This document shows positions 216 to 60,663 of a stretch of DNA of 64,000 nucleotides, piece after piece. Location: NCBI GenBank assembly GCA_037447605.1, contig CM074804.1, positions 744,001 through 808,000 of the forward strand. Reading direction: 5' to 3'. A model generated the notes under the pieces. That model was given only the letters and a program-made list of their open reading frames with translations, was not told where the DNA came from and did not search any database. Numbering within the stretch: the stretch's first letter is position 1; every line of letters begins with the position of its first letter. The translations under genes were made by a program, and so were the position numbers. This DNA comes from Zygnema circumcarinatum SAG 698-1b. Taxonomy: Eukaryota; Plantae; Zygnematophyceae.

Positions 216-7054
<6,839 letters not shown>

Positions 7055-21267: not shown

Positions 21268-24200
21268 TCATGGGAGTGTGAGCGGCCTGAGGCTTCCCAG
21301 TCTCGTTCCCACCCGCACGTTGACCGGCAGCGGTACATCAAGGCCCGCCGCAGTCTGCATCACCTCCTGGACCCTCTTGCCGAAGCTGGGCACGAGCACA
21401 TCCGGGACTTCAAACACCAGCTCGTCGTGTATCTGCAAACCGCGAGTGAAAAGCCACCGCACATATTTATTCGTTGGATTAGAAACGCAAAGCTCCCCGA
21501 TGCGTGCACGCATGTATGGCTGGTGGGACCCCATGGACTCATGGATGCATGGCTTACTGTACCTCCATGAGGAGGCGTGTTCGGCCTCCTTGAAAGCTCT
21601 CCAGCTCCTTTGTCGCAATCATGGCCTGCTTAACAATGTCCCTGCCAACAAAAAGACACGAGGCAACCGATGGCTTGTCATTTGTTTGTGTAGAAAAAAA
21701 TCGACTAGCGAGTTATGGAGGCCAAAGAGCGCCAACGCAACATCGCCGGTGTGAAGGCGGGACGAGATGAAAGGATGAGCGACTCACGCAGCGCTGCCCT
21801 GGATGGGTGTGTTGATGGCCTGACGCTCCGCTTGAGCTCTCTTCTCGGGATCCCACGAGTTGATATCTGAATTACATTCATCCAGTGCATAGACATCGAA
21901 AGAAAGAAAGCCCAAATCAGCCAGTATTGAGGCTTATACTGAATGAAATAAGGCTAGGTCTCTATAAAACAAAACTCTGCCATTATTATAAGAGACAATT
22001 TGTTGTACTGTATGCATTACAAGCAGGAGGAACAGGAGCTAACAGCCTAGCACGGACCTGGTAAGGGACGTTGGCGGCCGTACAATGTCTTGATGTAACC
22101 GCATGAACGGGCCTTTGCCTTTGTGGCCTCCACGAACCGTCTCACGTCTGGAAAGCACGCCATGAACGCGCGGATGACATTCTGTACTTCGTCAGGCCCA
22201 ACTTTCAAGGTAGCGGCTAACGCCTGATTGCCTTGGCCGTACAGAATTCCATCTGCAGAACGATCCCATGTTTCAACTTTCAACTTTTACATGCCAATCC
22301 CATGGCACAATTCAAACATGAGCATACATGTTATACTGTTCAGCCCTAGAGAAACTACAGCGCAGAAAACACAGGATAAGAAGGCAGCAGCAGCAAAACT
22401 GTAGCTTGTAAGGATGAAATCAGCAAGGGAATGAACGTACAGCAAAGACGCTTAGCCAACTGTCGTTCCTCGTCCGTAACAGCTCCCGGATACTTCTTCA
22501 AATACCTTGCCCCGATGAGGCGAAAAGTGTCTCCATCCACTCCGGCACGAAGAAGTATATTCAACTGCAAGGCATTACCTCAACCGCCGCCGAGGCAGCA
22601 TGACTCGACTTTCCATGCATAGCAGCCCCTAGGGAACCTGTGCCCTCTTTCTATCTGAGTAGAACATATAAGACAATTTCCGGCCCATTCAGAAGCAATC
22701 TGACTATGTGCGAGCATTGAAATGTGACTTTGTTAAGCAAAGAGAGGCCGAACCAAGTGCTTATCGGCTGCCAGATGCGCCGCCAAGCGCAGCTCAATTT
22801 GTGAGTAATCTGCTGACACCAGAGAATGTCTGCTTCCCAACCAAAAAGAAAGAAGTGAGAGGGAAAGGAAAAACTAGGTCAAAACGAAACCACCCTAATT
22901 GTTAAGTTAGTACTGCGAAAATCGAGCGAAAAGGTGTGCAACAAAGTTGTTTCAATTCAACTGGCGAGATGTTTCGTCGAACATCTTAAAGTTGTAAAGT
23001 TATCATTATGCATCTTTGTGACTATACCCTCCCCCTTCCCTTCCGGGTGTAAAGAAACCTTACCCTGGAGAGGAGATGAAGGCATCACGGACCATCACCG
23101 TGAAAGAATTTTCTTCCATTCCGGATTTTTCTTCTTCTTCTTTGGGTGAAGTTCCCTGAAGGGCATGCCTTGGCAAATTCTGCTTCCCAACGAGCCATCA
23201 GCGGTTAAATTTTTTACCCAGACCTGACAGGGAGGGAGCGAGTGGCAGAGAGGGAGGGAAAAGAAAAATGTTTGTAGGAGGGGTGCTGACCTGCAAGTTC
23301 GGATCTGAAGAAGAAAGTCTTCCGGTGGCTGTATTGGTGGCATTCCATGTACTGTGTATTCTTGCGCTCCCATCCTGACAAATGCCATATCTAATTACTA
23401 GGTACTTCTTTTGGATAAATTTAAGGGTTACCCTAATGTCTTGAACAGCAATACGAGGTTCACATAACTCGTTAACAGAGCGGAATTAGTTTTCTCTACT
23501 TTGAAGTTCAGGTGCGCAGCATAAAAAATAGTAGAAAAGAAGGCTGAGGCAGCCTGGAGTGTAACTGCTCGTTGTCTTGTATAATCAACTTGACGTTTGA
23601 TGAGAATAATTAAAGTGATTCTCTCAGAACTCTTACCTTATGCACCACAGCTTTCGAAATAAGTCCATCGACCCACGTCGACTTCACTTTCAGAGTCTGC
23701 CTAAACTGCAATTCCACCCTTCCCATGGATAAGAATGGAGAGTGAATATTCAGATGAAATGTTTTTGCTTTTAGTTCTTCCAACATGAGATCGTATGTTG
23801 TACCGCAATAATCTTCATAGGAAGTGGATGCAGTTTGGAAAGCTCAATCAGCGTTGCCTCATTCGTAGTGCAGTGTTGTTTGGCCTCCTTTTTCTTTATC
23901 AATCCTGTGCTCCTTCCGATCCCCTTGGGAAGGGCCAATTCCTGCAGGAGAGAGTGCGAAAGGGACTGATAATCCAGCTTGACACTGATAGCTTTGCACA
24001 TGGCCCAGCCACGATTGGTCCTAAATGTCCCTGCAGGGAATTTGCAAAAAAACGTGAAACCATCTGTACAATCGCGTAAAGTGCTTCATCCTTCGATCTA
24101 AAGAAAAATTGATTACATGATATAACGCTTTTGATAGCTGCTGGGGGCTCGCCAAGTTGATCGGATGTCCTACAAGAGCCTCTGCTTCCGCTGATAGGGT

Positions 24201-27200
24201 GTCCAGCCTTTTCTGCAAAAATAGTGCCAAACCAACGAGAAGCACTCAAAGACGAATAAAAATGGAGTCTTCGTTTAGGTAGCTGAGGCAGTGATCACAC
24301 GTATTATGTGATTGCAAGAAACGTAGCTATGCTTGCATTCTGGATTTCTTCGTGTTCCTATCCATTTCTAGTCTGGACTAAGGTGATTACATCTGTCCAT
24401 TAGCAAAAGCAGTCATACCTGTAAAAAATCTCTTTTCGATTGCAAGTAATTCAGCTGCACATGAGTGGAAACCGTCCACAATTAACGGAACAAGGTCAGA
24501 CAGGCACCAAAAAGTGGAAGCTGCCCCCCCACTATTCTTTTTCTCCTTTGAAGGCCAATTTAGAAACAGTTCAAGAACTCGACAGCACAAAACATTTATA
24601 GCCAATAAGCTCAAAGTAAAACATCACTCATACAGTGACCCGGTAGGCACGAACACTAACGTCAATCCCAATACCAACATCTTCAAGCCGTGCCAGTATA
24701 AAAGCAACGTCCATTTCCCTTCTGCAAGAATTCCCACACGAGCAAAAGTCAAACCAATTCATAAGCTTCTGTAGTCAATGAAGATGATAAGAAAAGAATG
24801 GGAAACTACATCCACAGTAGCAAGTCTGTTCCTCAAGCCATGATCTCTGGGTTGTGTTGTAGGCGACGATGCCCAGAGTATCTGTGCAAAAATTGTCTTT
24901 AAAGAGTCTTTGTCTTTAAAGAGTCTTGCAGCACTGGTACATACTGAAGGGACAGAAGCAAGCCTTCATCAAAGCGGTGGTAGAGATGTTTGCAGAGCTT
25001 AGCAGCCGTATGCAAGTCCTCTTGCATTCTTCTCAAAGGTGTTGAGTCGTTTTCATTTTTTTCAGATGTACTCCCTTCAATGTGCCTTCTAGCAAGGCTA
25101 GAGAGCTCATAGCTTTCAAGCTCTGGCTCCTGCAGCCCAAGATGCAGTCAAGGGCTTTTCCTACATTTTGACAATATGAGCGTTATCGAACGTACAGAAG
25201 ACAAGAAGTGCACGTTGGCTGACTGCACAACACAAATGGAAACAACGAACCTAACTAACTAAGAAGCTCATTAAGAAACTAAACTAACTTATGGACAAAA
25301 CCGTCCAGTCAGTAATTTGACGAGTAACATGCCGAGCAGCAAAATCTGAAGCAGCAATTGATTCATTCGGATTGGATACCAGCTCATAACCTGCAAGAAA
25401 TAAAAAACTAATCAGGAAATACCAGAAAAGTTAGGAAAAAAAACACTCGCAATAATCTTACACGACCCGCCTTGCTGGATAAAAGGCACTTTCAAACTGC
25501 AAGTCCGAGATCGAATCCCAGATTTTTAGAAACTTACCTTTGGGTCGACGAGGTTTTTTGCATTGAAGCCCACTGCACGAAATGCATGAACCAACCGGGA
25601 TCAGTATCATTATTCTTCATTCAAATCATTTTGCGAAAATCTAATGGAGCAGCAGAAGCATACTCTTTGAACCTTTTGCTAATAACTAGAATACTCATGA
25701 AAAAGTGCTCAGGAAAAATTGCTTTCTGGATACCTTCTATTTCACAAGCAAACAGATACCGAAGTGTTGCCTGCGTGTTGAAACAAACAATTGGCGTTTT
25801 CCACTTCAGAAGAAGTTCTGCCAGATACCTGTAAAGGAAATCACTCTCAACACTCGTAAGTCAAACGTCATACCTCTTGTTACTCAAACGCAAGGTTGTA
25901 AAGCTTGAGGTGGTACTGAACTGTATAATCACAATCCTATGTATCACTCTTATCCTTCATAAAGCAACAAAGCTAACAGTATAGCCTTTCAGAAGTCAGT
26001 CAACCTGAATTGCGCTATGTCACTCCCAATTTCTGCAGTGGTTTCCTTTCCGATACTATGAAAGTAAAGAGTAGGTGCAGGATCTGAGGTTTGGCTCCCT
26101 GCGAATCCGAAGGAGAATGCCAAACCAACAAGCTGCTTTTCTTTTTCAATGTCCTCCACCTCATTGCTGGTACCACTTCCAGAAGCCTCTGCTCTGCTGC
26201 AACGCCTCTGCACCAGAGGCCACAAAAACAGTGTTTCTCAAAATAGTTGATTACAGGCAACTGGTGATGAAATTCACAACCATAAACCCGTCATAAATAC
26301 TAAACAAGCTCTTTGACCCACAAACGAGTAAGAAGAATATTCATACAACCAGCAACAGAAAGCTGCCTTACTCGTTTCAAAAGATACTTCCGTTGTGTAG
26401 GAGATATGCCCCTAAGGGTGCTGTGGTATTGCTCGAGACGTAAGTCTGCGAAGAGGAGGCCGAAGGATAGGAGCTCTTCTGCGTTGGTCGCAAGGAGTGC
26501 GTCTTTTTCTGCCTGCGAGGATGCTGTTACGTCAACAATGTCACGAAAGATATTTGTTTCAAGAGTTTCCTTCTGAATTTCCATCGTATGTTGGCGAGGC
26601 TCCGCTTTAAGGTCGTGGTCTTTCGGAGACAGTCGCGGTCGCTCTTCATCCTTGGAAGGAATTAATACTTCATTGTTGGTTCTAAACAACGGTAGTGGAC
26701 CCTCCTGTTCACCAGGCAGGAAGTCCTGTTTCTTACTTTTGAACGAGGTTGTATTAGATACAGTGGGCTTTTGGCCGTTTGGTCGAATTATGCGTTTTGC
26801 ATTTGCCCCTTCTAAGGTATCGAGCACGTTGAAATTTTGCTTTTCCTCCGGAAACTGAGAATTCACTCCCCCTAGCTTCAATGCCTTTGAAAATGCTTCA
26901 GTTGGTTGCCTTGAGGACCCTGAAACATGAGCAGATCCTTCAATGACTGGTTTTCCCCTCGCGGAGAAACTGGAGGCTATGTGTGAAACCCGGTTGGAGC
27001 GTGGTTGTGGGGAAGGGTGTCCAGGCTGCAAGTTGCTATGGACAACACCCACAATGTTATTCGCCTCAACAGTAGCAATGTCCGATAAGGATGTAGGTTC
27101 ACTCGCGAGCATAGGACTTTCGTTGTTTCTTCTCGTCTGAAATCCACAGTGAGGAGTACGCTTCGGTGTTCCAGAAACGGGAGGGATATTCTCCGTGTTC

Positions 27201-27517
27201 TTGATAACGTCTGATGACTCGTGGTGCCAAAAAAAATGTCGCCTGCCTCTCTCCTGAAACCCTTTCTCGGTATCACCAACTGTTAGGCTGTTATTGGATA
27301 TGAAATTCTGGGCTTTCGAAGGACGATTCTTCGATTCGAAAGACAAAAAATGCTGTTTCAGCTGAACGTATGGCTGAGTTGCGCACTCTTGCTCATAATT
27401 TTCATCAGGCAAAGTTTCAGGTGCAACTGCTCGCTTTCGGTTGATTGCAAAAGGCGGAGAGCCTGACTTCTGTTTCCTTTTGAATGGAAGAGGTAGCTTC
27501 CAAGGTACCTGACACAT
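21268..27517 (-). CDS. Family-A DNA polymerase, Pol nu/Pol theta-like, with no helicase domain; start codon uncertain (5' region may reach about 28.6 kb)
   Basis: Spliced reconstruction: about 380 aa low-complexity N-terminus; degenerate exonuclease-like region (LVGLAFSF, PIVCFNTQ, NLVDPK); EMDVAFILARLEDVGIGID; thumb (INLASPQQLSKALY, HPLPMKII); TATGRLSSSDPNLQNLP; VRDAF; motif A SADYSQIELR (about 22790-22830); motif B RQLAKRLCYGILYGQG; TLYGRQRPLP; ERQAINTPIQGSAADIVK; motif C LLMEIHDELVFEV. Stop at 21268-21270. One junction near 25380-25130 could not be resolved. Confidence 0.9.
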
Positions 27518-29274
27518 AACAGAGCATCGATTTTCTTTTTCAGTTCAAAAAATGCGGAATTCATTGCAAATGGGAAATGGCTTTACGCATTAGGGATATT
27601 TTTTAAATATTTGAAGCGATGTAGCGGAGGATTTGGTTGTTGAAATGGTCTTACTTCTTCGGTTGAAAAGGCGACAGAATACGGGCATTCCTGCTGCACC
27701 ACCTGAAAACAAAGAGAAGTATGTTTCATTTAGAGGTTCGTGCAGGTTTCAAAACAAAACATGGCTGGTCATTTCAACCTATGTGCTGTTTCTGTTCTGG
27801 AGAATTCAACTCAGAGGATATACCTAAGAGTTTATTGCGATTTATCTACAAACAAACACATTTTTCTTTTCCAAAAATCACAGTGCAATGCATTCTGCAG
27901 AGAATCGCGAGGAGGATCCCCAAACCGGACTGCTTCTGAAATTCATATCGGTCTGTGAAGGACTTCAACTGTTCCCAATATTCCACGTTCCACGCTCAAA
28001 TCGAAACAGCATCCTTTGCGCAGCTAGCTGTGATCAGTAAAAGCTCGAGTCTGTGACTGAAAACAGCCACCAACCTGCCGTTCCGGAGGAGGGATTTTAG
28101 GCCTTATAATGTACACCATCCTGCTTCCGAGAGTAGGAGCACCTTCTGCCCGAATTAAAAAAAAGAAACACTTCAGATTTTCAATTCCTGTTTGTATAAT
28201 ACACTCGATATCACCGACCGTCTGTTCGGATGCATCCTACAACACTCGCGGTGCCTTGCAAGTCAAACGCAGCTTCTTGCGTTCGAAAAATACGAAACAA
28301 AAGCTTGTACGATACAATATTGATACAAGCCACATATTAGATCCCTATATGAAGCTTAAGTTCACCATATTTGCGGTGAAATCCTCACCAAGCTCCAGCC
28401 CTGTAAGCAGCTTCAGGAGGTCTCAGCGTCGCCCCTCTTCCCTGCCCGCGATCGTTGCATCGACCGCCGGCGGGCCAGGGATGCTCTCAAATGTTCGACT
28501 TGAAAAACTTCCAAAGTGCCCTGTCGATGAAGTGGCCAATGGCCATGCGCTGTTCCAATTGTCGGGCGGGCGAGAAACAATTTCCGCCATGACCGAACCA
28601 TTCCATGTTCATGGCCATCAACAGTAACAGCACAACATGGAGATTCGGGAACCACGAATAGCCGGCTGGCCGGCCGGTTCGTGGTTCCCGAGCGGCCCCT
28701 CCCTCCCTCCCTCCCTCGAGTCCCGAGAGCGCCGCGCGCCGTCGATCTCTGAAGTGGACGGTCAGGATGCGCCCAGGGACGCTGAGTGGCCGCACCGCGA
28801 TAAGGTTGGACCCACCGCACGCCGTCGGGGTTAACATCCCCTTGTATCCCAGCCGCGATGGCTGCTGTCAGTAGCTTCTATTGAAACTATTTTCTACTGA
28901 AATGGAATTTCTCTTTCAAGGTCAAACTCAAATTGATTGTGAACGTGGACTTGAAGCTTTTCTCATAATAGTGATTACTTTGCTTCCATGGTTGGCTTGC
29001 TTGACAATACAAGCAGCCCCAGCGTGTACAAATGTTTCTCACTAGACTGTGAATGGTGTACTTCATGTATGTGGTCCGCATTGCGTACACATCCGAGTCG
29101 ACATGGAAGAGTAGACGACATTTCACACCACAAGACAAGATGAAACAGCATCCTTAGAGCAGTAGGGCACAGCCTTGAATGGAGGGGCTGTACATTATCG
29201 AAAAAATGGTGTGTAGACTAGAAACCACGAGCGATATACATTCACTTAACAGACGATAGGTGCAAACCTTCCGA

Positions 29275-31822
29275 CTACTTTGCTAGCCTTCCAGCTGGAA
29301 CCAAAGGAGCGTAGGATGGCTCCTCATGTGTGCGAGTGTATGTGATGGCGATAACAAGCGCCGTTAGTGCCATCCCCAAAAGAAAGGATGGTACAGCACA
29401 TCTCAAAACCATATTCGAAATTCCGCCGTTTACCTGCGCTCACCATAGAACGCCCACGGCGAGTAAAGAGCCGCAGAATCAGCCAATCAACCTCGAATAA
29501 TACTTCCAGATTGAGAATTCTCGAAGTCAACAGTCGAGAAGAATTTCCAGTGCCATCCTAGCCAACTTTTACAATCTATGGGCGTTTTCAATTGTCATAC
29601 TCCCATACCATACCATACCATACCATACCATACCATACCATACCATACCATACCATACCATACCATACAGACCATACAGCGAAAGAGAGCGAGGAGGGTA
29701 CTTCCTGCTTACCATGGATAGAGTATCCTTCGCTTGTATGCGAGCACACTTGCCGTTTGGAGGTGGAGCGTAGTCCCCATCGACCGCTACAGCCAAGCTG
29801 AAGAGCCCCATCACTCCGGGATGCGCCTGCTCCATGCTGTAAGTTGATCTCAACGTCAGGACTTCGCCAGCAGAGACTCGGTCCGAGTCTGAGTGCCGAC
29901 AGGATCCCATGCCTGTCACATAGCCGGCCTCATCTCCTGCCGATGATCCTCGGCCGTAGATCGGGAGTGAGTCGCAGATCAGACGGTCGTCCTGCACGAG
30001 CACCGTGCGGCTGGGAAGAATGAGAGTGGAAGAGGCAAAAGGGACCGAGAAACGTAAACGTCGCCAGAGCTCATTCAGCCTTGAAGGGATAGGGAGAGGA
30101 AGGAGGGAAGAGGGAGAGTGAGAGGGAGAGCGCGCGGGAGGAGAGGGAGAGAGTGAGAGGGGGGGGGGGGCGCGAATGGGGGCGACATAGGGGAGTTGGG
30201 GAGGGGGAGGGGAGAGTGGATTGGGAGAGAGGAAAAGACAATTTTAATTTACATTTTTGCGGAGTAAAAACTAATTGTTTGCGCCCAAATCAAAATTATT
30301 TCCGTCTCTTCTGTGGTAAGATCACAAGCTTTAGTTCAGGGATTAATCCGAGCCTCGAGGGAGTGGGTGGGGGAGGGTCAGAGGGAGAGAGCGAGCATAA
30401 GGCTGAGAGGGAGAGGGAAAGGGAGTGGGAGAGGGAGAGGGAGAGGGAGAGGGAGAGGGAGAGGGAGAGGGAGAGGGAGAGGGAGAGGGAGCTCTGACCT
30501 TGCCCCAGAGGGTTATTCCGAGGCCTCCCACATGCTGGTGCCCTAAGGAGTACACGATGCGCCCGCTGTCAGGGAAGCGGAACGTTTGGTTTCTCGTGTG
30601 CTGGCAACCCTCCAGGCCGCCGGTCGCAGTACAGGCTGGCACGTGGTACTCCACCTGTCCTCCAAAATCCAAGATAAAACATCACGTGTAAATTTGAGTC
30701 TTCATAAAATGAAAATTGACACTTATTTCCCTACATTGCTCATTGATTCAATTAATTTACGAGACCTAATTCCAACATCAACGCTACAAGTCTCTCTCTC
30801 TCTCTCTCTCTCTCTCTACCGTACCCTCTAACTTAGATGATCTTGTATACTCCCTACTTCACCAGTTAACTCCACTCCTTTCCCTCCCCCCCCCCCTCCC
30901 CCCTTTCCCTCCCCCCCAAGTTCTTTCGCCCATTAAAGAGAGAGAAATTCGAAAATGCCCTCAATTCACCTTGAACCCCCATACCTCCCCTACCCCACCC
31001 CACACATCTCCCCGCATACATTACCTGACAGCCATTCTCCGGCGAGTCCGCCATGGGCTTCCCATTGTCCGTCACATCGAGAACATACACCCTTAGAGGC
31101 ACAACGCACTCGTCGTACGGAACATACTCCACGGTGTACCTTAAATAGTACGTGCGAGGCGTGTCTTCGTACCCTTCCCGGACGGCGCACCTGTCGCCTT
31201 CCTCGCAGCATTGCAGCCCCCCCGTGTAGCCCTCCGCTTTGGGTGTGATATTGTACGCCGCGCATTGGCATTCCAAGCACGCCTTGGCGCTGACGGCGCC
31301 CCGCGTGTCGATGGCGTGAATTTGGACCCACCAAGCTTCAAAGGAGCCCGCTTCCACCTGCGAGGGGTTATTAGACTCCAGCCCGTAAGGGGCCGGAAAG
31401 GAGACGTCCGTACGGCGGGTCTCGCTGCCCGCGCCAAAGACTTGGCTTAGGGCTTCGTTTTCGCATGTGCCGCCATTGGGCCATAGCTTGCCGGGGGGGT
31501 CGTTGCCGGGGATTTCAGCCCGGGTATCGTTAAGGAGTTGGGAGGTGCGGAGGACGACCCAATGGTGGAGGTAGACGTCAGACAAAGGAACGGATTCTTC
31601 AGATTCTGAAACTATTTCGCCATAGAAACGGCGGACGGCGATGTGGCCTTTCGGCCATGGCAGGAGCTGCAGGCGGCGGTAGACCTCGCCCGGGCGCAGA
31701 GTGATGGGCCGGGAGAGGAAGGTCCGGGAGATAGCCTCGCTGGCCACCACGTTGCGGGAAAAAAATGAAGCGAGTGCAATGAATGCTATGGCTGCCTTGG
31801 AGAGGAAGGCGAAGCTCGCCAT
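29275..31822 (-). CDS. Stress up-regulated Nod19 (SURNod19) family protein; signal peptide and probable C-terminal transmembrane helix
   Basis: Signal peptide MASFAFLSKAAIAFIALASFF; family motifs WPKGHIAV, VPLSDVYLHHW, FGAGSETRRT, IHAIDTRG..CLECQC, GGLQCC, YYLRYTV, GHQHVGG, ICDSLPIYG and GYVTGMGSC, HPGVMGLF. Four exons (approx. 31822-30995, 30655-30500, 29990-29715, 29433-29275). The last exon assignment is less certain. Confidence 0.88.
29603..29668. repeat. (CATAC)n microsatellite in a SURNod19 intron
   Basis: About 13 CCATA units. Confidence 0.95.
30405..30490. repeat. (GAGAGG)n tract in a SURNod19 intron
   Basis: Near-perfect hexamer array; a further GA-rich tract lies at about 30090-30230. 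Confidence 0.9.
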
Positions 31823-39000: not shown

Positions 39001-40257
39001 CGTTTGCGCGGCACCTGACTGCGCCACTGCAGCAGAAAGACAAGGTATGAATGGTGATGGCGCCTTCCTTAGTCGAAGCCGAATGTGCATCACACATTCG
39101 GCTTATTCGGCTTACACATTCCTTATTGTGTGGTAGATCCATTAAACCATTGAATCCATGATCTCATTTGCCCAAACCCTCATCATACTTGATCTCCCCA
39201 CTTTCCCTTTTCTCCCTCTGGTTCTATCCCTTTGCCCTCCTCTCAATTCATGACACCCGGGAGTGTTCTCTCTTGCATGGTTTCTAATTCTGACGTTGCA
39301 AATCAGGAATGTTCCACTGTGTAGGAAGGTGTATGCGAAGTTTTGGACGTGATGAACCAATATGGACTCACCAAGGAGGATCGTGATGCCATCCTTGAAA
39401 TGTGTTCTCTCAAAGTGAGCTTCAAGAACTTCCACCTTGAACACTTTGTTACTGCCTAACTATTACAAGAAGCATTGCGTCTTGATTCTGCCCTTCTCCC
39501 ATAGCAATGTGGAACACCTAAACTCTCCTTTTGTACGGATTTCTTCATCAAGCTTTTAAGCAGCTACTGAAGGTATAATCTGTTTTCCGATGGTTGTTGT
39601 ACTTTGCAGGCTTTTCAAGATCCTCAAGTGGGCATAACAGCTCAGACAAAGCGAACATTCACTCGAGTTTGCAATCAGTGGGAGGCGAAGCGCAGGGTCA
39701 AGTCGGGCTGCATGTTGGCGGATTTGAATGCTAAAAAGAGAAAAGCTGCGCCTGGTAGTTGAAGCTCTCCTGATCCCTCTCAAAGCAACATTGCTACCTG
39801 TAGGTTGTAGGGAATCAAAACTTGGTGTGATTAGTCCTTTGTCATTGTCGTGGGTTATCTCGTTGGTTCAGAGTACTGGGTTCTGAGGTCATTTCTCTTT
39901 TCTCTCTCTCGCGCTCCTTGCACCTCTCCCTTTCCCTCTCTCTCCCCCTCGCGCTGTCCTCTTGACTCGGTTTGTTGTGGCATTGCAGGGGAGGAAGACC
40001 ACAAGTCCTTTGCTGAAAGCAGTGCTGAGGAGGATGAGGAGGGAGTGTGCGGGAAGAATGCGAAAATAGCAAAGCGTATTTCATCAGAAGAGAAGAAGAA
40101 GGAGCGGCAGGGAAGCAGAGTCCCACGTGGCATGGCACAGCGCAGGACTGGAGGAAGAGAGTGGAATAGCACTACGGTTGCAGGCACTATGAATTCTGAA
40201 AATGGAGCGTGGGGAGACGAGTTGGGCCTGGTTATGGGCGCAGGGAGAGGAAGATAG
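33026..40257 (+). CDS. RFC1: Replication factor C large subunit RFC1-like protein, divergent, with no recognisable BRCT domain
   Basis: LWTTKYSPKAMSDLVGN; Walker A LLYGGPGVGKSS; VNASDSR; Walker B VMDEVDGMSTGDKGG; KIPIICICNEKY; QGDLRLAINRLQ (about 36.42-36.46 kb); RFC1-specific C-terminal domain ENYINHRP..AADAIGDGDLVN, GERNFNRFAVWLGKNSTAAK, YGLTKEDRDAILE, KRTFTR. Exon 1 33026-33168, exon 2 from about 33743, last exon about 39989-40257. Confidence 0.88.
36478..36541. repeat. 16-bp minisatellite, four copies, in an RFC1-like intron
   Basis: TCTGAATGTGTTTAAAC-like units in tandem. Confidence 0.85.
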
Positions 40258-48793: not shown

Positions 48794-51700
48794 TCACTTC
48801 CACGGATCTCCCTCTGCTCGAATCTCGGAAGCCTCCACGACCTCATTGGGGCCCTCGCTCTTCTCCTCCGGCTGGCTCTTCTCCTCCGGCTGGCTCGTGA
48901 CGGCGCGAGCCATCATCTGGTACACGCGGCTTCCAAAGTCTCCGGGATTCTCCAACTACAAAGTCAGGGCAAGAAAAGGAGTAAATTTAGGGGCAGTCGG
49001 CCTACAAAAAGTTTCATACTTACGACATACGACGTCAGTAACGAACTGGCACAAAATGTGTAGCGAAAGCAGAATCAAAAGTACTGCTTTCATAACACTT
49101 CTTCCTTTGAGATATGCTAAGTCTGACACCTCTGCATAAGGGGATTAGAGTTAGAAAATGTTTCTAACAATCGGAATTCGAAATCAGTACACACAGTACA
49201 TCAGTGCTCCTACAAATCAAAATACTCCAAGGTGTCTTCACGTGCTGTTGGTCGCTTTGTGTTCCCGTTCTTTAGCGGATCCAGATCATTACTTAAACAG
49301 TGCCCTTGATGCCTGCGCCTATCGGAGCCAGCCACTTCTCAAGATTTTAGGTGGAAGAGACGTACTGTGAATCCGGACGTGAGATGTGCCGTCTCGTACA
49401 AGAGATGCGCCAACTCCTTGGCTTGCTCACTCTCAGGGGAGTTTCTGCTCTGGACCTGTGGCAGCAGGGCACAGGCACAGCCAGATAGAATGTGAGAAGA
49501 AGGAAGAACAAAACAAGCGAGAGCATTTGGTGTCCCACTCTAGTCCTTTCCACACAAACACGTAGTTCAAAAAATAAGCAGTTTGGAAGAAAGAGCATGA
49601 TAATTAATAAGAGCTGCAAAGCAAGAGAGAAGGAAGTGAGGATGAAGGGAGCTGTAGTAGGGAGGGCAGAGATGATGAAGGGAGTTACAGAGTGGGAGAC
49701 CCACTCTTTAACCCACTCTGTAACTCCCTTCATCCTCGGCCTTCCCTCCCACCCTGTAGGAAGGGAGGCAAAGAGGATGTACATTCAAGTCCTTAATTAT
49801 AGGATGGTTCGGATTTATCTCCAAAACGCGCTGAGACCGCATGTATTCGATCTCCTGCAGGCCCACCATCTGCATCCGCATCAACCTGCAGAGGTGAAAG
49901 CCACAGCCCAACTCCAAGAGGTCCTTTAGAGTGCCGTTACATACGTGAAAACCATCACCATGTCAATTACGGCTATTTCACATCTCCCCTCCCTCCTATG
50001 CCATATCCCTCTCCTTACATGGCCTATTAATGCCTACACTGGAGGCAATAACTAGTTCATTAAGCTGCAAACTCTTGTGCATGTTTTCAGATCTTCCTCT
50101 GTTCTCAACAGTGAACCCAGAGGAGGGAGAAGAAGCTGGCTTACTTCTCTTTGTTGGCGGAGTATCCAAACTTGCCAGCCACCATCACGCAGGGCGAGGA
50201 TTCAAGCCTTCTGGACACTTGCACCTTCGACACTTTGTCTCCAAGCTGCTGCTTCATCCAGTCGCACAGCTTCTGGAAATCCTTCTCAACTTCCTTCTGC
50301 TCTGCCTCATTGGTTTCTTCACCTGAATGACATTTCCTTAAGAGTCAGATACTCTTTTAAGTTTAACCGATCCTTAAAATAGTAGTCTGCAAAAGCGAAT
50401 ATGTTTTTAACCCGCTGGTTTTTCGACTGCATTACTCTTTCCACGTCCCTGACAGAGCTCCCCCTCCCACCACAGAGCAAGTCCAGAGCTGCAATAATTG
50501 GACTTACCAATATCAAGATCGTCCTTGCTCACATCTGCAAATTTCTTATCGTTGAAAGAGCCGAGTGCTTGCAGCGCGGGCTCATCTAAAGTCTCCAAAA
50601 GGAACAGCACCTGCATGCAGCACAACCGCTTCACTGTCATCTTCCATGACAAAAACACCTACGTCTGAAAGGCAAACGACTACACGAAAGTGTTTCCTCT
50701 CTCTTCCCCTTCTCTTCTTCTCCTCCCATTTTGGTCGGCCAATGATTAGTTCTAAAGACCGCCCTCATATAAAAGTAGGTCGGTATCTGGAATGCTGATA
50801 TTCTTTACCCTTACTCTCGTCTCTCTTCTTCGTCTGCACATTGCTTTATAAACGTATTGTTCTCGACTTTACCGCTCAAGTAGTCAAAAGGCCTATTCCA
50901 TCCATTACAGCCAATGAATGCCTAATTGCCCTCACCTCTAATCCCTTCTTTTCCAACTTCTCTAAGAAGGGCGCGGTCTTTGCACTTCCAATATTCTCTG
51001 CTGCAAGATAATAAATCTCCTTCTGCCCCTCCTGCATTCTGTCCACATAGGCCTGAAGAGAAGTGAGCTCGTCACTCTTGCTCGAGTAAAATCTCAGGAG
51101 AGGAGCCAGCCGCTTATGGTTAGCAGAGTCCTCGAAACAGCCCAACTTCAAGTTCTTGGAGAAATTTTCCCAGAATACTTTGTAATCCTGCAATCAGCCC
51201 ACAAGTGAAGAATCACCACTCGTTAAGACTCACAGATAAGAAGTTGACTTGGAATGATCGACTCAAAGAAAGGACTGAATTATCTCTTCACCCGGGCCTT
51301 ACCTCAGAATCTTCCTTGTTTGCAATCTCGCTAATCATATCCAGAGTCTTCCTCACCAACCGCTTTCTCATAATGCGAATCTGCATCGCCATGAATACAA
51401 CAATATTCAAATGAACAACGAAGATAATCATCTCAACGTTGAAGAAACGACACCATGTAAGACATGGAACTGTGGCATGTTTACATCTTAAAAATTAAAT
51501 GAACCATGCACAGAATCAGGTAGTGCCAGCAAGGCTCGCCCATGAGACCTACTTCCTGCAAAAGGAATGAGTAGATGGAATCACGACACTGTTAGCTTCA
51601 AATGGCCCGTAAATTCTTTTACTGCCAACACTTCCTATGAAGAAAAAGTGTCCTCCTGCAAGTGTATGGCATAATTTGCTCTAGAAATGCAAGGCTTCTC

Positions 51701-54700
51701 TTCCAGTTAATTGAATAGATTGAAAATGATTTTCTAGGACTTTGCTGCAACCTGATGCTCCCACGTTTTTGCGATGCTGACACGAGAGAGCCATGGGGTC
51801 GAAGGGGTTCTTGTCAAGTTCCTAATCAATTTGGTTACACGACGGGAGAAAGAAAAACGAGGATCTGAAATTCGGCACTCACAATACGTGATTCCTGCAA
51901 AATCTCTCGAGACACATTAAGGGGCAGGTCGTTGGAGTCTACAACTCCCTTGATGAAGCTCAGGTACCGTGGGAACTGTACCATCCCGACAAAAAATCCG
52001 TAAGTATGAATTGGAAACGAATTCAAGTCCACAGAGAGCACACAATCAAACGTTTCTAAACCAGAAAACATTTCACCCCAGACTTATATCAAGGAATTCC
52101 GGTAAAAGCATACCCTCAAACATATCTGCGAAACTGCCGAAGGAAGCACACTCATCTGGGATCATTTTGGCATTTTGGCGAAAAACTGAAACGCACATCA
52201 ACTGTTTTGTGTAATGGAAACAAGGAACGAAAACGTACAAGTTCACCATTGAACTCGTCAGAGATAAACACCCTCTTGACGTAGAGGCGGATGTTTTTCG
52301 GCACTTCCTGCATGTCTGCGTTGAAGGGCATCATGCTGGGCACATACAATAAACTCCGGAACTCGATTTCACCCTGCAAGTGCAGCAGCTCCAATGAAGT
52401 CAAGAAACTGATATTCGATTCTCCTCTATCCGCATCTCTCAAGCTGGAGTTACATCTCCAATGAAGACAATAAAAATGATATTCAATGCTCATCTATCCG
52501 CGTCTCTCAAGCTGGAGTTACATCTCATTTCAACACACTAATTATCTTGGTTGAGAATCGAACACGACCATACTCCAATTCCTACGAGCTTGCCCAGCAG
52601 AGGAATAACGAGATTTTATATTATCTATTGTAAGGGTTTCAAACATTGACCGCCATTTCACAAAGAATTCACTACATCCTTTCAAATATTTCTCACGGCA
52701 AAACTGGCCATTGTCCTCATCGTATTCATAAAGAGCATCATGATCTTAAAATGGCCCTCTGAGGCTACTGATATTTCCATAACTTCAAGACAAGGCCTCC
52801 ACTCACCTCAGTGGTGAAGTGTGAGTATGCCAAGGGCTCCAAAAATTCCTTGAAAGTGGTCTTGTAAAATTCATCATACTCTGCCTTCTCCACCTCTTTC
52901 GGAGGCCTCACCTGCAAAGTAACATTTACAGCTGATGAGCTTGAAATAATCGGCATTCCCTCAAGTGAGGGACCCATTCCATTCAGCTGCAGTCGCTCAC
53001 TAGTCGGCACAAAAAGAGGGACACAAACCATTAAGAGGGCTTTCTCTAGCTCAAATCAACTATTCAGGAGTAAAAAGGGCTAGTTTGGCTCACCCAAAGA
53101 GGCTTGGTTTCATTAGCCAATTCCCAATCCTCGTACTTTTCGGAAACCGTCTTCTTCTGCTTGACACGACAATACCGGCACAGTATGCATCATTTTAGAG
53201 AAAATGTCATAAGCAGACAGATCGGGTAACAGCTCAAGCCATCGCCATGGCAACTCTTTTGAATACATGCAGAAAGTTTTTAGGTGATTTCTTTTAGAAA
53301 AAGTGCAGTGTTCTGCAGGAGAGGACTCCGACCCCTAAGATCATTTTGAAGGTTTTTCTTCACACATCATACAACCTGTAGTTCTGTTCTTTCGAACTCT
53401 ACAAAAAACAAAAAAACATCCTATTCGCTCTCTTCCTCACCTTCGTCACTGGCTCTTCCCCTTCCTTTCCGGGTTCTTCCTCTTCGACCTGCACACCAAC
53501 CGATATTGACCGCTAAGATTTGACTTTCTTGGGTAAAAAGCACGAAGCACAGACGCATATATAATACATACATTTCCCAAAATCCCGCTCCTTAAGCGGC
53601 CGGCCAGACTAATTTATTTTCCATTTTCGGTTCAGCTAGTTTCACATGTCACAAGGACCTGCAGGGACGTCCCCCTTAAGAAAAGCACTAAGGAATGGTA
53701 GTCAATAAGCTGTGCCCTGCCTACCTCCTTGGTGCGCGTGAGCTCCTTCCAAGTGTAGATGGGAAAAGAAATGAACTGTGAGTAGTTCTTCACCAAGCCT
53801 TCCAAACGATTCACATCCGTGTATTCGAATTTATCATCTTCCTGTGGAGTTTCCAAAACATCCGCTGATCAACTTCTAATGAACTATCCGTAGCTGTCTT
53901 GAAGTGAAGCACGCATACAATGATACATGCAAAACGCAAAGCTGACTTTGGGAAACTAAAGGGTAAAATCTGCACTTTAATTCCCGCATCAATTCATGCT
54001 TCCTCACCTTCAGATGCAATGTGATGGCTGTACCCCTTGGAAGCTGGGAATCCGGGTTAGTATCTTCAGTTATGATATAACTACTCTGCTCCGCTTCCGC
54101 CTCCCAAATCCATTGTTTGTCGGCCCGGACACTCCTTGTTCGAACTGTGATCTGCATGTGCACACAGAACCGTAGGAAAGGACTGGCTTTCAATAACCCT
54201 GAACCCGCCATACCTGATTCCTCCCCCTCTTCCTATCTGGCTCTGTGTAGGAATACGATTAACCTTTATCTTCAAGAAACTCAAAAAATGAAGTTCCTCA
54301 CCTTGTCAGCGACCAAAAAGGCCGAATAGAAGCCGACCCCAAATTGGCCAATAAGATTGCTGTCAGCCACAGCTCCCTGCTCTTTCTTATCCTGCCACAG
54401 TCAGAGCATAAAATCAGTCAGGAGAAAGCTAAACGAAGACAATTGATGCTTGCACGAACTAATTTCAACTGAATAACGCATGTGTGAAGCCTCCGCAATG
54501 TCAACGTAACATGAGAAGTTCCTCGATATGCACGACTTTGAGGCCACGACAAACGCCTCCTACCAATGATCTGTAGGGCAAATTAAAGAAATGACCCTCG
54601 CTCTCTCCCCAGCAACTCGTGTCCTATCTTTCATCTTCCTTTGCCTAACCTTCAATGCTTGAACAAACTTGGCTGTTCCACTCTGCGCGATCGTTCCGAG

Positions 54701-58410: not shown

Positions 58411-60663
58411 CTAAACGGCCTCTGGATGAAGAAGCTGCTCCAAGACAGGCGTTGCCCTCTCAGTGCCGAGCCGCTCCACCTGCTTCTCCAAGAAGCGAAC
58501 GTACTCCATTGCCTGGTCCAGCATGGTGGCTATGTCCAGCTTGTCCGCATTCGGCACGAGCGCCTGCCAGTTCATGCGAAGAGACAATCAAATAAGTGAA
58601 ACTCACAAATTGACTTTTTGGAATCACGCATTGCAATCATGTCTTGAAGAACTCCGCCCGCCGACCCTCCGGATCACACACTCAGGGTCAACCCTGCCAG
58701 TATGTACTCTACCATTGAACAGGTCGCCCCTTCAACAACAAATGAAAGCGTTAAGCACATGCAGCACAATGAAAGATAGTTTCTTCGAAGAGATAGTTTA
58801 CCCCTAAGGCTCTGATTTTCTGACTGATTCTTTCCCTTCGATTCCGAGCTGCGATGCTCTGTGGGTCCGTCGCAGTTCCACGCTTCTGCCTCTGAAGTTG
58901 TCGCTGTCGATAAGCCTCCCGAGCAGCTGCAGCCTCTGGGGAAATGCCACGTGGCAAGCTGCTATCCAACCCTAAAGGTTTTACTGCCTGACTTGCTTTC
59001 TGTCCAGGTGTCAAGCTGGCGGAACTAGCAGCAGCTGGTCCGTTCAAACCCTCCGCAAGCTCCACATGGAAACTGTCAATCTTCGCTTTAGTGTTGTTGC
59101 TTCTTGCGCCTCCATGCGCCTTAGCGCTCTTCCTCTTCCCCGCTGCTGATGTCGCCGTAATATCACTAGTAGCCGCAGGTTGAATGTCAGCATCCAGCAT
59201 TGGGATTTCCATGTGAAAATTACTGCTCTGAAGCGGAATCTGTTGCGTAAGAGGGGGAGTTGTCGGCTGCAGGTTCAGAGTATTGGGAGTTGCAGAATTT
59301 CTTGGAGTCTTGGGCTGCATAGACCACTGGTACCCAGAAGCATCTTCAGTAACGGAGCTCGACGGACTCATCATAGCATCTTCACTTAATGTATCGCATG
59401 CCGCCATGGACCCCCCACATTCTTGCGCTGAAACTATCCCATCAAAGGAAGCTTCATGGAAGCCTCTCACAGGAGTGACAGGACAGCCAGCTGGATAGTC
59501 ACCGATGACGGAACTTGAACCTGGAACTGAAACTGAAACTGAACCTGGCCATGGACGATGAAATCGACTCGATATCTGCTCTGTGGGAGGCTGTGGAGCC
59601 GCCGGGGAACAAAACATAGGAGCTTCAGATCCTTCATTTGAAACTAATAAAGGTTCCTCATCCTCCTCCTGTCTGACAGCGGCGCCCCCATTGGCTGCAT
59701 TGTAGACAGTTTCTGGATTTTTTCCGCTGCCGAAAAGGTCAAAATTCAACATAGCATAAGGGGGTAAAGCATCATCCAAAAAGCCACCGACATCGATCAA
59801 GTCGTTCCACAAGGGCTCCACATCTTGAAGTGATGAGTTTGAGAATGGAGGATCGCCCCCAGCCGTCTGATCACAAGCCATCGGAGTGCAGGATCGGGTA
59901 GGGAGGCTCCCACTAAATTCCGTAAAGCTGCATAAAAATTGAGGAAGACCCATGTGACGAAATTTCAGTACGAGACAATGCCATACATTGCACAGGTAAG
60001 AAGATTGACGGTATTCGAATATCGCTCCTTTGCTCTCTCTACTTCGCCTCTCCCACTAATTTTCCGTCCTCCCTCTCCCACTGTTCAACTCGCCTCCCCT
60101 CTCCCATTGCTCCTCTTCCACCCTCACTCCCCTCTCCCCTCTACTGCAGTTCCTCTCCCCCCTCTCTCTCTCTCTCCTCCTGCAGCTCCGCCCTCCCACT
60201 CTTCCTCCCCCCCCCTTGTCCTCTCCCTCCCTCTCTCCCTCCTTTCCCCTGCCCTCTCCCTCCCTCTCTCCCTCCTCCCCACTGCCCTCTCCCACCAGAC
60301 CCTCCCTCCCTCCTTCCTCCCGCCCTCTCCCTCCACCACTCACCTTCCCGGCCCCGCCATCTGTGACCTCTCCGCGGTAAAACCTGTCTTGGATGGCCCC
60401 TCCCCCAGAAGCGCCCCTCCCTCCAACCCGCCTCCCCCGCCTGCCAGGTGGCACAAAAAGCCACCCAGGGCGCTATCTTCCAAAAAGTCTCCCACGTCAG
60501 CGCCCATCAGCAGCTGTTGGCCCCATTCGGGCAGCCCCGAAACGGACGGCTCGTATGCTGCCACGTGGCCAGGTGGTGCCACATGGCGCTCACTCATGCT
60601 GCTGAGGTGGAAATAGCGCCCGCTGAGCTGAGCGGAGGACATGGCAGAGAGTTGGGTCTGCAT
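58411..60663 (-). CDS. bHLH transcription factor related to subfamilies VIII (RSL/HEC) and XI (LRL)
   Basis: Three exons: 60663 to about 60345, about 59928-58802, and 58563-58411. Domain [56 protein letters not shown] at the C-terminus, preceded by about 450 aa of low-complexity sequence. Confidence 0.92.

What the first reader, a model, noticed from the sequence alone, without database searches (positions are those of the whole stretch)
21268..27517. Helicase-less Pol nu-like family-A DNA polymerase in a green plant genome
Seen: a complete, apparently catalytic Pol A domain (motif A SADYSQIELR, motif B RQLAKRLCYGILYG, motif C EIHDE) preceded by a degenerate exonuclease-like region and about 380 aa of low-complexity sequence. 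There is no room for a helicase: the next gene upstream is SURNod19 (stop at 29275) and I saw no helicase motif in between. Established: angiosperm family-A polymerases are the organellar PolIA/B (POP) enzymes and Pol theta/TEBICHI, which has an N-terminal helicase; POLN (Pol nu) is the helicase-less relative known mainly from animals. Features matching POLN as I recall it: Tyr at the O-helix ddNTP-selector position; a basic residue (R) right after the catalytic Lys, where human POLN K679 confers low fidelity and thymine-glycol bypass; a moderate insert of about 26 aa between NLQNLP and VRDAF; and no long Pol theta insert 3 before motif C. Inference: a nuclear Pol nu-like lesion-bypass or recombination polymerase, either retained in this lineage and lost in flowering plants or derived from a POLQ duplicate that lost its helicase.
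Basis: partly seen in the sequence, partly recalled or inferred. Interest (0 to 1): 0.78.

Follow-up and report, generated by a model that had tools for sequence, protein, structure and literature searches.

The report
Helicase-less Pol theta/nu-type polymerase gene
This streptophyte alga has an intact gene for a stand-alone, proofreading-dead DNA repair polymerase related to animal Pol theta and Pol nu; other streptophyte algae share it, it is not a true Pol nu, and similar stand-alone enzymes are already known from protists.

Summary
On the minus strand, 27517-21268 carries an 18-19 exon gene of 993-1016 aa. All splice sites are GT-AG and the reading frame is open.

- **Protein layout:** a 382-aa low-complexity first exon, a degenerate 3'-5' exonuclease-like region, and a compact family-A polymerase domain with every catalytic motif.
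- **No helicase:** no helicase coding sequence was found in the 64-kb window or in two orthologous loci.
- **Orthologues:** Klebsormidium nitens (GAQ91778.1, 827 aa, no helicase), two Closterium species, and a transcript from an unnamed EukProt species.
- **Tree:** the protein sits in a well-supported clade (99/98) of Pol theta, Pol nu and stand-alone eukaryotic polymerases. That clade is separate from bacterial Pol I and from a POP-like organellar polymerase.
- **Position inside the clade:** it groups with protist stand-alone polymerases (Gefionella, Balamuthia, Rhizamoeba), not with Pol nu. AU tests reject neither a Pol nu nor a Pol theta sister position.
- **Published Pol nu criteria:** it has the six motifs and the (K/R)xxY O-helix, but lacks the third Pol nu insert.

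It is therefore Pol nu-like in build and probably in function, but not a demonstrated Pol nu orthologue. I rate it a new member of a known kind, of moderate interest. One exon junction (25390-25130) remains unresolved.

The parts
26372..27517 (-). Exon 1. It runs from the first ATG of the open frame and encodes 382 aa of low-complexity N-terminal region. Two basic clusters (KRKQK ... NRKR) lie near the start. The last ~60 aa align to Klebsormidium GAQ91778.1.
   Evidence: ORF. No Pfam match. Donor GTAAGG at 26371 and junction to exon 2. 29% identity block to P0168.
25538..26207 (-). Exons 2-4 (26207-26005, 25828-25734, 25572-25538). They encode the degenerate 3'-5' exonuclease-like region: QLVGLAFSF, IVCFNTQATLRYL, NLVDPK.
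   Evidence: Splice sites and phases. In the alignment to E. coli-type Pol I, Pol nu and Pol theta, the ExoI and ExoII acidic residues are replaced.
25130..25390 (-). Unresolved junction. Three readings keep the frame open: skip this stretch, a 69-nt exon 25390-25322 (VMSWYPIRMNQ...), or a 54-nt exon 25382-25329 (LVSNPNESIAASDFAARH). The 54-nt reading looks like a diverged duplicate of the start of the next exon.
   Evidence: The acceptor TTTCTTGCAG at 25390 resembles the gene's other acceptors. By-eye match of ESIAASDFAARHV to ESYELSSLARRHI. No RNA data were available.
24945..25129 (-). Exon 6. It encodes the end of the exonuclease-like region: EPELESYELSSLARRHI ... LYHRFDEGLLLSLQ.
   Evidence: It matches the Klebsormidium block SELDSYELSDL and P0158 EPELRDYTLRSIL.
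23637..24721 (-). Exons 7-11 (24721-24661, 24454-24419, 24212-24117, 23941-23804, 23705-23637). They encode the start of the polymerase domain and the thumb, including a small insert at the Pol theta/nu 'insert 1' position.
   Evidence: Junctions fitted against the transcript-derived orthologue P0151. Pfam DNA_pol_A on 24024-24245. The 36-nt exon was found from YLQSKRDFLQ.
23064..23374 (-). Exons 12-13 (23374-23291, 23179-23064). They encode motif 2 (TATGRLSSSDPNLQNLP) and the 26-aa insert before VRDAF, at the 'insert 2' position.
   Evidence: Pfam E 7.7e-9. The insert is about the same size as in Pol nu.
22754..22829 (-). Exon 14. It encodes motif A (LVSADYSQIELRLAAHL), which holds the catalytic Asp.
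22058..22564 (-). Exons 15-16 (22564-22441, 22252-22058). They encode the fingers and O-helix (RQLAKRLCYGILYGQG) and motif 5.
   Evidence: Pfam E 1.4e-13. PDB matches. The exon borders coincide with the ends of homology in exon-sized ORFs from other genomes (P0004, P0007, P0002).
21268..21866 (-). Exons 17-19 (21866-21788, 21641-21563, 21432-21268 including the stop). They encode AERQAINTPIQGSAADIVKQAM, motif C (LLMEIHDELVFEV) and the C-terminus.
   Evidence: Pfam E 4.1e-9. PDB match.

Best explanation
The gene encodes a stand-alone family-A DNA polymerase of about 1000 aa that lacks proofreading and belongs to the Pol theta/Pol nu branch.

**Build.** It has a long, low-complexity N-terminal region, a catalytically dead exonuclease-like fold, and a compact polymerase domain with all residues needed for synthesis.

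**Family.** It belongs to a small family found in streptophyte algae (Klebsormidium, Closterium, one unnamed transcriptome species and this genome). The nearest relatives of that family are the helicase-less polymerases of protists.

**Likely function (inferred).** It most likely works in the nucleus as a specialised repair or lesion-bypass polymerase, alongside a separate full-length Pol theta. Like Pol nu and the Entamoeba enzyme, it would extend primers without proofreading, with some strand displacement and tolerance of damaged templates. The Tyr and Arg in the O-helix and the insert next to the primer-template binding surface probably shape its fidelity.

**Shown:** gene structure, motif integrity, absence of a helicase, orthologues, and clade membership.

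**Inferred:** nuclear location, catalytic activity and lesion bypass.
For: **Gene model**
- 18-19 exons, all with GT-AG introns and an open frame.
- The polymerase half is collinear with the transcript-derived orthologue P0151 (61% identity).

**Catalytic residues**
- Motifs A, B, C, 2 and 5 are present, as are the residues aligning with Klenow R668, D705, E710, R754, K758, Y766, Q849, H881, D882 and E883 (residue numbers are from my own knowledge).
- The exonuclease acidic residues are not conserved.

**No helicase**
- tblastn was negative in the window, in Closterium locus L005 and in Klebsormidium locus L007.
- The annotated Klebsormidium protein is 827 aa with only PF00476.
- Intergenic ORFs match no domain.

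**Tree (careful search, LG+C20, 60 rows)**
- A clade of Pol theta, Pol nu and stand-alone eukaryotic polymerases has support 99/98.
- The algal family together with P0158 and P0106 has 99/95, and joins the protist stand-alone clade at 98/91.
- A POP-like sequence and bacterial Pol I fall elsewhere.

**Localisation hints**
- The Klebsormidium N-terminus is acidic, which is unlike a transit peptide.
- The window protein has two basic clusters in a bipartite-NLS-like arrangement.

**Precedents**
- Entamoeba EhDNApolA is nuclear, lacks exonuclease activity and bypasses thymine glycol (PMC2919377).
- Pol-only, PolQ-like genes exist in Dictyostelium and Thalassiosira (PMC7515707).
- abanPolA and alvPolA are regarded as nuclear (PMC10877234).
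Against:
- **Uncertain 5' end.** The start codon is only the first ATG of the frame, and the 25390-25130 junction is unresolved.
- **Localisation was not tested.** The first 33 residues are basic with no acidic residue, which would also suit an organellar presequence.
- **Position within the clade is soft.** Support for joining the protist clade falls to 75% under LG+F+G4. AU tests do not reject alternatives.
- **Tree sampling gaps.** The tree contains no plant TEBICHI and only one POP-like sequence.
- **Exon-wise PDB searches** score Taq and Klenow above Pol theta and Pol nu for three exons.
- **Ambiguous sister sequences.** P0158 and P0106 may be bacterial. A 95%-identical fragment is labelled as a Planctomycetota MAG, and the contig is 70-76% GC and intron-free. 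Horizontal transfer in either direction is therefore possible.
Confidence: 0.6

Rival explanations
1. It is a true orthologue of animal POLN (Pol nu). The gene would have been present in an early eukaryote, kept in streptophyte algae and animals, and lost elsewhere.
For: - It has no helicase and has all six motifs.
- The O-helix has the published POLN hallmark (K/R)xxY (criterion from PMC5472330; motif).
- Inserts at positions 1 and 2 are about the same size as in Pol nu.
- The AU test does not reject the family plus POLN as one clade (p = 0.31, delta lnL 6.0).
Against: - The best trees place POLN with Pol theta, and the algal family with protist stand-alone polymerases.
- The short POLN-specific insert after motif C (HIQTPEL in P0226) is absent.
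- Identity to POLN (35-37%) is no higher than to bacterial Pol I (37-40%).
- The literature restricts POLN to metazoans (PMC5472330).
Confidence: 0.1
2. It is a green-lineage duplicate of Pol theta (TEBICHI) that lost the helicase and central region and then diverged fast.
For: - The O-helix exon's only PDB match is Pol theta, and it is weak (E 0.5; RQQAKQICYGIIYG against RQLAKRLCYGILYG).
- It shares the exonuclease-like block DPxxxxW...P(E/S) with Pol theta.
- The AU test does not reject the family plus Pol theta as one clade (p = 0.39).
- Gene fission of PolQ has been proposed for other Pol-only genes (PMC7515707).
Against: - The Pol theta clade (99/95) excludes the family in the best tree.
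- There is no Pol theta insert 3, and insert 2 is much shorter than in P0084.
- No plant or algal Pol theta sequence was available to test a nested position.
Confidence: 0.15
3. It is an organellar (plastid or mitochondrial) polymerase of bacterial origin, like POP, chloroPolA or pyramiPolA.
For: - Exon-wise PDB searches are led by Taq, Bst and Klenow.
- Identity to bacterial Pol I is about 37-40%.
- The first 33 residues are basic with no acidic residue.
- Green algae are known to carry extra lineage-specific organellar family-A enzymes (PMC10877234).
Against: - The tree separates the family from bacterial Pol I and from the POP-like P0166 with strong support.
- POP motifs (ADYGQLE, NFSIAYG, HDEIILEG in P0166) are absent.
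- The exonuclease site is dead, unlike replicative POPs.
- The Klebsormidium orthologue starts with an acidic N-terminus.
Confidence: 0.07
4. The locus is a decaying or mis-modelled gene. The exonuclease-like part is breaking up, as shown by the duplicated exon fragment and ambiguous junction, and no functional full-length protein is made.
For: - The 25390-25130 stretch has several competing splice options and a diverged duplicate of the next exon.
- No RNA evidence exists.
- The N-terminal half is poorly conserved. Only two short blocks match Klebsormidium and none matches Closterium.
Against: - All three tested splice options keep the frame open over about 3 kb of coding sequence in 18-19 exons.
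- Every catalytic residue is intact.
- The polymerase half is 61%, 51% and 40% identical to orthologues in three other algal lineages. That argues for purifying selection.
- The orthologue P0151 comes from a transcriptome.
Confidence: 0.08

Closest known systems
Stand-alone (Pol-only) Pol theta-like polymerases of protists: Dictyostelium and Thalassiosira genes noted by Leal et al. 2020 (PMC7515707), Entamoeba EhDNApolA (PMC2919377), and possibly abanPolA of Harada et al. 2024 (PMC10877234)
   Same: - No helicase and a dead or missing 3'-5' exonuclease.
- Complete polymerase motifs, with a nuclear role shown or inferred.
- In my tree the algal family joins sequences from Gefionella, Balamuthia and Rhizamoeba at 98/91.
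- Most share the K-R-x-x-Y O-helix.
   Different: - None of these papers reports a member from streptophyte algae or any green plant.
- The algal proteins have their own N-terminal blocks (SPTQRKYLLKR, QLVGLAFSF).
- I could not confirm that my protist sequences are the published abanPolA.
- Harada et al. derive abanPolA from Planctomycetes, whereas my tree places this whole group beside Pol theta and Pol nu.
Animal DNA polymerase nu (POLN)
   Same: - A helicase-less polymerase of about 900-1000 aa with an inactive exonuclease-like domain.
- (K/R)xxY in the O-helix.
- Moderate inserts in the thumb and before motif A.
- The same large clade.
   Different: - Not sister in the best tree.
- The third POLN insert is absent.
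- 35-37% identity.
- The long low-complexity N-terminus is not shared.
- POLN is reported only from metazoans.
DNA polymerase theta / plant TEBICHI
   Same: The same clade, a similar O-helix (AK-x-x-C-Y-G-I-x-Y-G), and an exonuclease-like domain with the DPxxxxW block.
   Different: - No helicase and no central region.
- No insert 3 and a short insert 2.
- It lies outside the Pol theta clade (99/95).
Klebsormidium nitens GAQ91778.1, annotated 'DNA polymerase I superfamily'
   Same: It appears to be an orthologue. The architecture is the same, the N-terminal blocks are shared, the polymerase domain is 40% identical, and the two group together in the tree.
   Different: It is 827 aa. Its gene model lacks the ExoII-like exons and part of the thumb, probably because of model errors. 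The neighbouring genes differ.

Membership tests
Family A DNA polymerase (Pfam PF00476) | Polymerase domain with motifs A, B and C and their catalytic Asp, Glu, Lys and Tyr residues | tested here: met
   Pfam hits on four exon pieces.
POLN (criteria of Takata et al. 2017, PMC5472330) | All six conserved polymerase motifs with key catalytic residues intact | tested here: met
POLN (criteria of Takata et al. 2017, PMC5472330) | All three POLN sequence inserts present | tested here: not met
   The test used POLN P0226 aligned to an E. coli-type Pol I. Extra residues are present in the thumb and before motif A. The POLN insert after motif C (HIQTPEL) is absent. Insert positions were read from that alignment, not from the paper's figure.
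POLN (criteria of Takata et al. 2017, PMC5472330) | (K/R)xxY in the O-helix core instead of (A/T)xxF | tested here: met
   The window has K-R-L-C-Y. POLN has K-K-V-V-Y and E. coli-type Pol I has K-A-I-N-F.
POLN | Groups with metazoan POLN in a phylogeny | tested here: inconclusive
   It is not sister in the ML trees. The constrained tree is not rejected (AU p = 0.31).
Pol theta / TEBICHI | N-terminal superfamily-2 helicase domain fused to the polymerase | tested here: not met
   tblastn with three Pol theta helicase domains found nothing on the gene's strand in the window, in L005 or in L007. No Pfam domain lies upstream. The orthologue is 827 aa.
Pol theta / TEBICHI | Polymerase domain inside the Pol theta clade, with a long insert before motif C | tested here: not met
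   The Pol theta clade (99/95) excludes it, and there is no insert before motif C. The AU test does not reject a sister position (p = 0.39). No plant Pol theta was in the set.
POP (plant and protist organellar polymerase) | Active 3'-5' exonuclease motifs, POP-type motifs, and grouping with POP | tested here: not met
   Exonuclease acidic residues are lost. The motifs of POP-like P0166 are absent. P0166 falls far away in the tree. Only one POP-like sequence was available, and I recognised it from motifs recalled from memory.
Protist stand-alone Pol theta-like polymerases | Helicase-less, exonuclease-dead, and grouping with Amoebozoa, malawimonad and picoeukaryote sequences | tested here: met
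   Joint clade at 98/91 under LG+C20 and 75% under LG+F+G4. Eukaryotic origin of members comes from names and gene neighbours.
Nuclear localisation | Nuclear localisation signal and no organellar presequence | not testable with these tools
   Basic clusters were seen only by eye. No predictor was available.

The most novel reading that the evidence does not exclude
Streptophyte algae keep a third, previously unlisted type of nuclear family-A polymerase. It would be part of an ancient eukaryote-wide lineage of stand-alone Pol theta-like enzymes that is distinct from both Pol theta and Pol nu. That lineage may have exchanged genes with Planctomycetes and was lost on the way to land plants or flowering plants. 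This would mean the 'Pol nu solution' (a helicase-free bypass polymerase beside Pol theta) is old and widespread rather than an animal invention.
Probability: 0.3. Interest if true: 0.6.

Novelty: new member of a known kind. Interest (0 to 1): 0.45.

Why it matters
Textbook accounts give the green lineage two kinds of family-A polymerase: organellar POP and nuclear Pol theta/TEBICHI. Pol nu is treated as restricted to animals.

An intact helicase-free relative, conserved across at least two classes of streptophyte algae, adds a third kind to the lineage that gave rise to land plants. It also gives a testable case for how Pol theta-type enzymes split their jobs between end joining and lesion bypass.

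The interest is limited because stand-alone Pol theta-like genes are already recorded in amoebae, diatoms and other protists. The Klebsormidium orthologue also already sits in public databases under a generic name.

Tried and rejected

- The genome-contig scan covers only bacteria and archaea.
- The word search with an alignment led by P0158 was swamped by low-complexity words and returned only five proteins.
- The word search with the Klebsormidium polymerase domain found no further full-length family members of 455-1447 aa, only bacterial Pol I at 35-40%. Only 8000 candidates were scored, so this is weak evidence of absence.
- The Atlas look-up returned only generic Pol I clusters.
- The treekit AU test with the mixture model did not finish in three calls. 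I replaced it with iqtree2 under LG+F+G4 on 41 rows. The constrained full searches were cut off at 110 s.
- Supplements of PMC10877234 are not held. I therefore could not check whether abanPolA includes my Balamuthia and Rhizamoeba sequences.

**Readings rejected or left open**
- An 11-nt micro-exon (VMS + TG, donor GTATCC) runs into a stop with every acceptor I read through by eye.
- A possible 27-nt exon (SANVHFLSS, about 25225-25199) has good splice sites but no homology. I left it open.
- The N-terminal half found no match in the Closterium locus.

**Joined model**
- I did not send the joined spliced protein to any database, family, structure or paper search. Those searches were done exon by exon, by reference.
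- The joined model was built only inside local scripts, for BLAST against already fetched proteins, alignment and trees.
- No structure was predicted for the window protein for the same reason.
Full report
**1. What is in the sequence**

The minus strand between 27517 and 21268 carries a chain of short open frames. Pfam DNA_pol_A matches four of them: 24024-24245, 23201-23485, 22050-22286 and 21271-21618, with E-values from 1e-4 to 1e-13. The 405-aa first ORF and the pieces after it match no family.

The window looks like a gene-dense eukaryotic genome with short introns. The upstream neighbour on the same strand is SURNod19. Earlier notes of this scan call the organism a streptophyte alga and mention a separate polymerase theta gene on another piece. 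I did not check that note. The nearest relatives I found do come from streptophyte algae.

**2. Gene model**

I fitted exon borders with a script. It enumerated GT/GC-AG pairs and scored each junction peptide against two orthologues. One was P0151, a transcript-derived protein from EukProt. The other was P0168, Klebsormidium nitens GAQ91778.1.

The result is 18 exons, plus one optional exon:
- 27517-26372
- 26207-26005
- 25828-25734
- 25572-25538
- optional: 25390-25322 or 25382-25329
- 25129-24945
- 24721-24661
- 24454-24419
- 24212-24117
- 23941-23804
- 23705-23637
- 23374-23291
- 23179-23064
- 22829-22754
- 22564-22441
- 22252-22058
- 21866-21788
- 21641-21563
- 21432-21268

All introns are GT-AG, and most acceptors read (Y)GCAG. 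The three variants give 993, 1011 or 1016 aa with no internal stop.

The stretch 25390-25130 stays unresolved.
- The acceptor at 25390 is as good as any other in the gene. It opens a frame that begins VMSW, matching the conserved DPxxxxW block of Pol theta, Pol nu and the protist enzymes.
- A second frame of the same DNA (LVSNPNESIAASDFAARHV) looks like a diverged copy of the start of the next exon (LQEPELESYELSSLARRHI).
- This points to a small tandem duplication. Only RNA can say which form is made.

**3. No helicase**

- The frame of exon 1 is closed by a stop at 27545-27547, and the first ATG is at 27517.
- The 1.7 kb up to the SURNod19 stop holds no ORF with a Pfam match and nothing similar to the Klebsormidium N-terminus.
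- tblastn with the helicase parts of three Pol theta proteins found nothing on the gene's strand in the 64-kb window. It also found nothing in the 21.8-kb Closterium locus L005 or the 19.2-kb Klebsormidium locus L007. The only window hits were two chance-level ones, one of them in the unrelated RecQ-like gene on the plus strand.
- The annotated Klebsormidium protein is 827 aa with PF00476 as its only domain.

**4. Catalytic state**

I aligned the protein with an E. coli-type Pol I (P0301), Pol nu (P0226), Pol theta (P0023, P0084) and relatives.
- All polymerase motifs and the residues that bind metal, dNTP and template are present.
- The O-helix reads RQLAKRLCYGILYG. Tyr stands where Pol I has Phe, and Arg follows the catalytic Lys.
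- Arg at that place is not diagnostic on its own. Ordinary bacterial Pol I proteins with AKRxNFG occur in the set. The Tyr is the feature shared with Pol theta and Pol nu.
- In the exonuclease-like region the first ExoI Asp, the ExoII Asp and the ExoIII Tyr are replaced, so proofreading is very unlikely.
- Compared with Pol I there are about 10 extra residues in the thumb and about 18-20 before motif A. There are none before or after motif C.

**5. Relatives**

- An exhaustive HMMER search of 1.84 billion representatives with the 79-aa exon piece gave no hit above 56% identity and only four at E <= 1e-10.
- The best hits are an EukProt Trinity transcript family, Closterium sp. NIES-53 and Yama58-4 (CAI7780253.1, CAI5472649.1), and exon-sized ORFs on unnamed ENA and JGI contigs.
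- In those exon-sized ORFs, homology begins and ends at the window exon's borders, which suggests conserved intron positions.
- A word search with P0151 added Klebsormidium nitens GAQ91778.1 (46% to P0151). After that came bacterial Pol I at about 41% and POLN at 37-38%.
- Over the polymerase domain the window protein is 61%, 51% and 40% identical to the Trinity, Closterium and Klebsormidium proteins. It is 37-40% identical to bacterial Pol I, 35-37% to POLN and 32-37% to Pol theta.
- Klebsormidium shares N-terminal blocks with the window protein (SLRKLNPSQRKIVLKQ against STLRGISPTQRKYLLKR, KLVGVGFILSF against QLVGLAFSFGF, SELDSYELSDL against PELESYELSSL). This supports orthology despite the low identity.

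**6. Phylogeny**

A careful IQ-TREE search (LG+C20+F+G4 PMSF, 60 rows, 431 columns) gave these results. Supports are ultrafast bootstrap / SH-aLRT.
- A clade at 99/98 holds Pol theta (99/95), POLN (100/100) and a set of helicase-less eukaryotic polymerases.
- That clade is apart from 26 bacterial Pol I rows and from the POP-like P0166.
- Inside it, POLN joins Pol theta (93/69).
- The four algal sequences together with P0158 and P0106 (99/95) join a clade (96/81) that contains Gefionella, Balamuthia, Rhizamoeba and picoeukaryote-like metagenome sequences. The joint support is 98/91.
- The eukaryotic nature of several of these follows from their names and from neighbouring genes such as UQ_con, COX24_C, HEAT-Maestro and RCC1.
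- Quick trees on 77 and 60 rows agree.

Under the simpler LG+F+G4 model on 41 rows, the join to the protist clade has 75% support. AU tests reject neither family plus POLN (p = 0.31) nor family plus Pol theta (p = 0.39). Clade membership is therefore firm, and the position inside the clade is not.

Caveats:
- No plant TEBICHI was in the set, and only one POP-like sequence, which I recognised by motifs recalled from memory.
- P0158 and P0106 may be bacterial. A 95%-identical fragment is labelled as a Planctomycetota MAG, and the contig is 70-76% GC, intron-free and gene-dense, with no informative neighbours.
- Harada et al. (PMC10877234) link their nuclear abanPolA to Planctomycetes Pol I. Transfer between eukaryotes and Planctomycetes, in either direction, therefore stays open.

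**7. Comparison with what is known**

- Takata et al. 2017 (PMC5472330) define POLN by six motifs, three POLN inserts and (K/R)xxY, and find it only in metazoans. The algal protein meets the first and third criteria but not the second.
- Leal et al. 2020 (PMC7515707) record Pol-only proteins that group with PolQ in Dictyostelium and Thalassiosira. They found only POP and TEBICHI in Arabidopsis and rice.
- Entamoeba EhDNApolA is a nuclear, exonuclease-free family-A enzyme that bypasses thymine glycol (PMC2919377).
- Harada et al. 2024 list ten new eukaryotic family-A types, including chloroPolA and pyramiPolA in green algae. None is from streptophytes.
- Czernecki et al. 2023 treat the Pol theta cluster as helicase-fused.
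- My paper searches found none that describes this algal family.

**8. Verdict**

The best reading is a stand-alone, proofreading-dead Pol theta/nu-type repair polymerase. It is conserved in streptophyte algae and is probably nuclear. I rate it a new member of a known kind.

Function, localisation, expression in this species and the exact evolutionary origin remain inferred.

**Note on method**

The joined spliced protein was never sent to a database, family, structure or literature tool. Those searches were made exon by exon, by reference. The joined model was used only inside local scripts.

Noticed in passing
window 25329-25382 versus 25067-25129 (minus strand): One reading frame of the optional exon (LVSNPNESIAASDFAARHV) looks like a diverged copy of the start of the next exon (LQEPELESYELSSLARRHI). 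This suggests a small tandem duplication inside the exonuclease-like region of the gene.
   Followed up: partly
window 29575-29720: A 15-nt tandem repeat lies beside the last large SURNod19 exon. It reads as (WYGMV)n on the minus strand and (PYHTI)n on the plus strand.
   Followed up: no
window about 650-3400, plus strand: Exons of a RecQ-type helicase ([18 protein letters not shown]). It lies downstream of the polymerase gene on the other strand and is unrelated to it. It accounts for one of the two chance-level helicase hits in the window.
   Followed up: no
window 30150-30700, 39850-40150 and 60050-61350: Long GA/CT and related microsatellite tracts produce (RE)n, (SP)n and (GE)n pseudo-ORFs on both strands.
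   Followed up: no
window 50876-54211, minus strand: Exons of an HSP90-family gene (Pfam HSP90, E 2e-33 on one exon).
   Followed up: no
L006 (Logan ERR12716960 contig, 6228 bp): P0158 is a 908-aa helicase-less polymerase that is sister to the algal family. Its contig is 70-76% GC, intron-free and gene-dense. A 95%-identical fragment is deposited as a Planctomycetota MAG protein (MEC8493334.1). Whether it is bacterial or eukaryotic is unresolved.
   Followed up: partly
P0014 (Priapulus caudatus XP_014662038.1): The predicted Pol theta-like protein contains its C-terminal polymerase segment twice. This is probably an assembly or annotation artefact, and I left it out of the trees.
   Followed up: no
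P0084, P0308, P0340, P0367 (1173-1310 aa; unnamed ENA and Logan contigs): These proteins sit inside the Pol theta clade and carry PF21099 plus PF00476, but show no DExH or GxGKT helicase motif. They may be truncated models or further helicase-less Pol theta forms.
   Followed up: no
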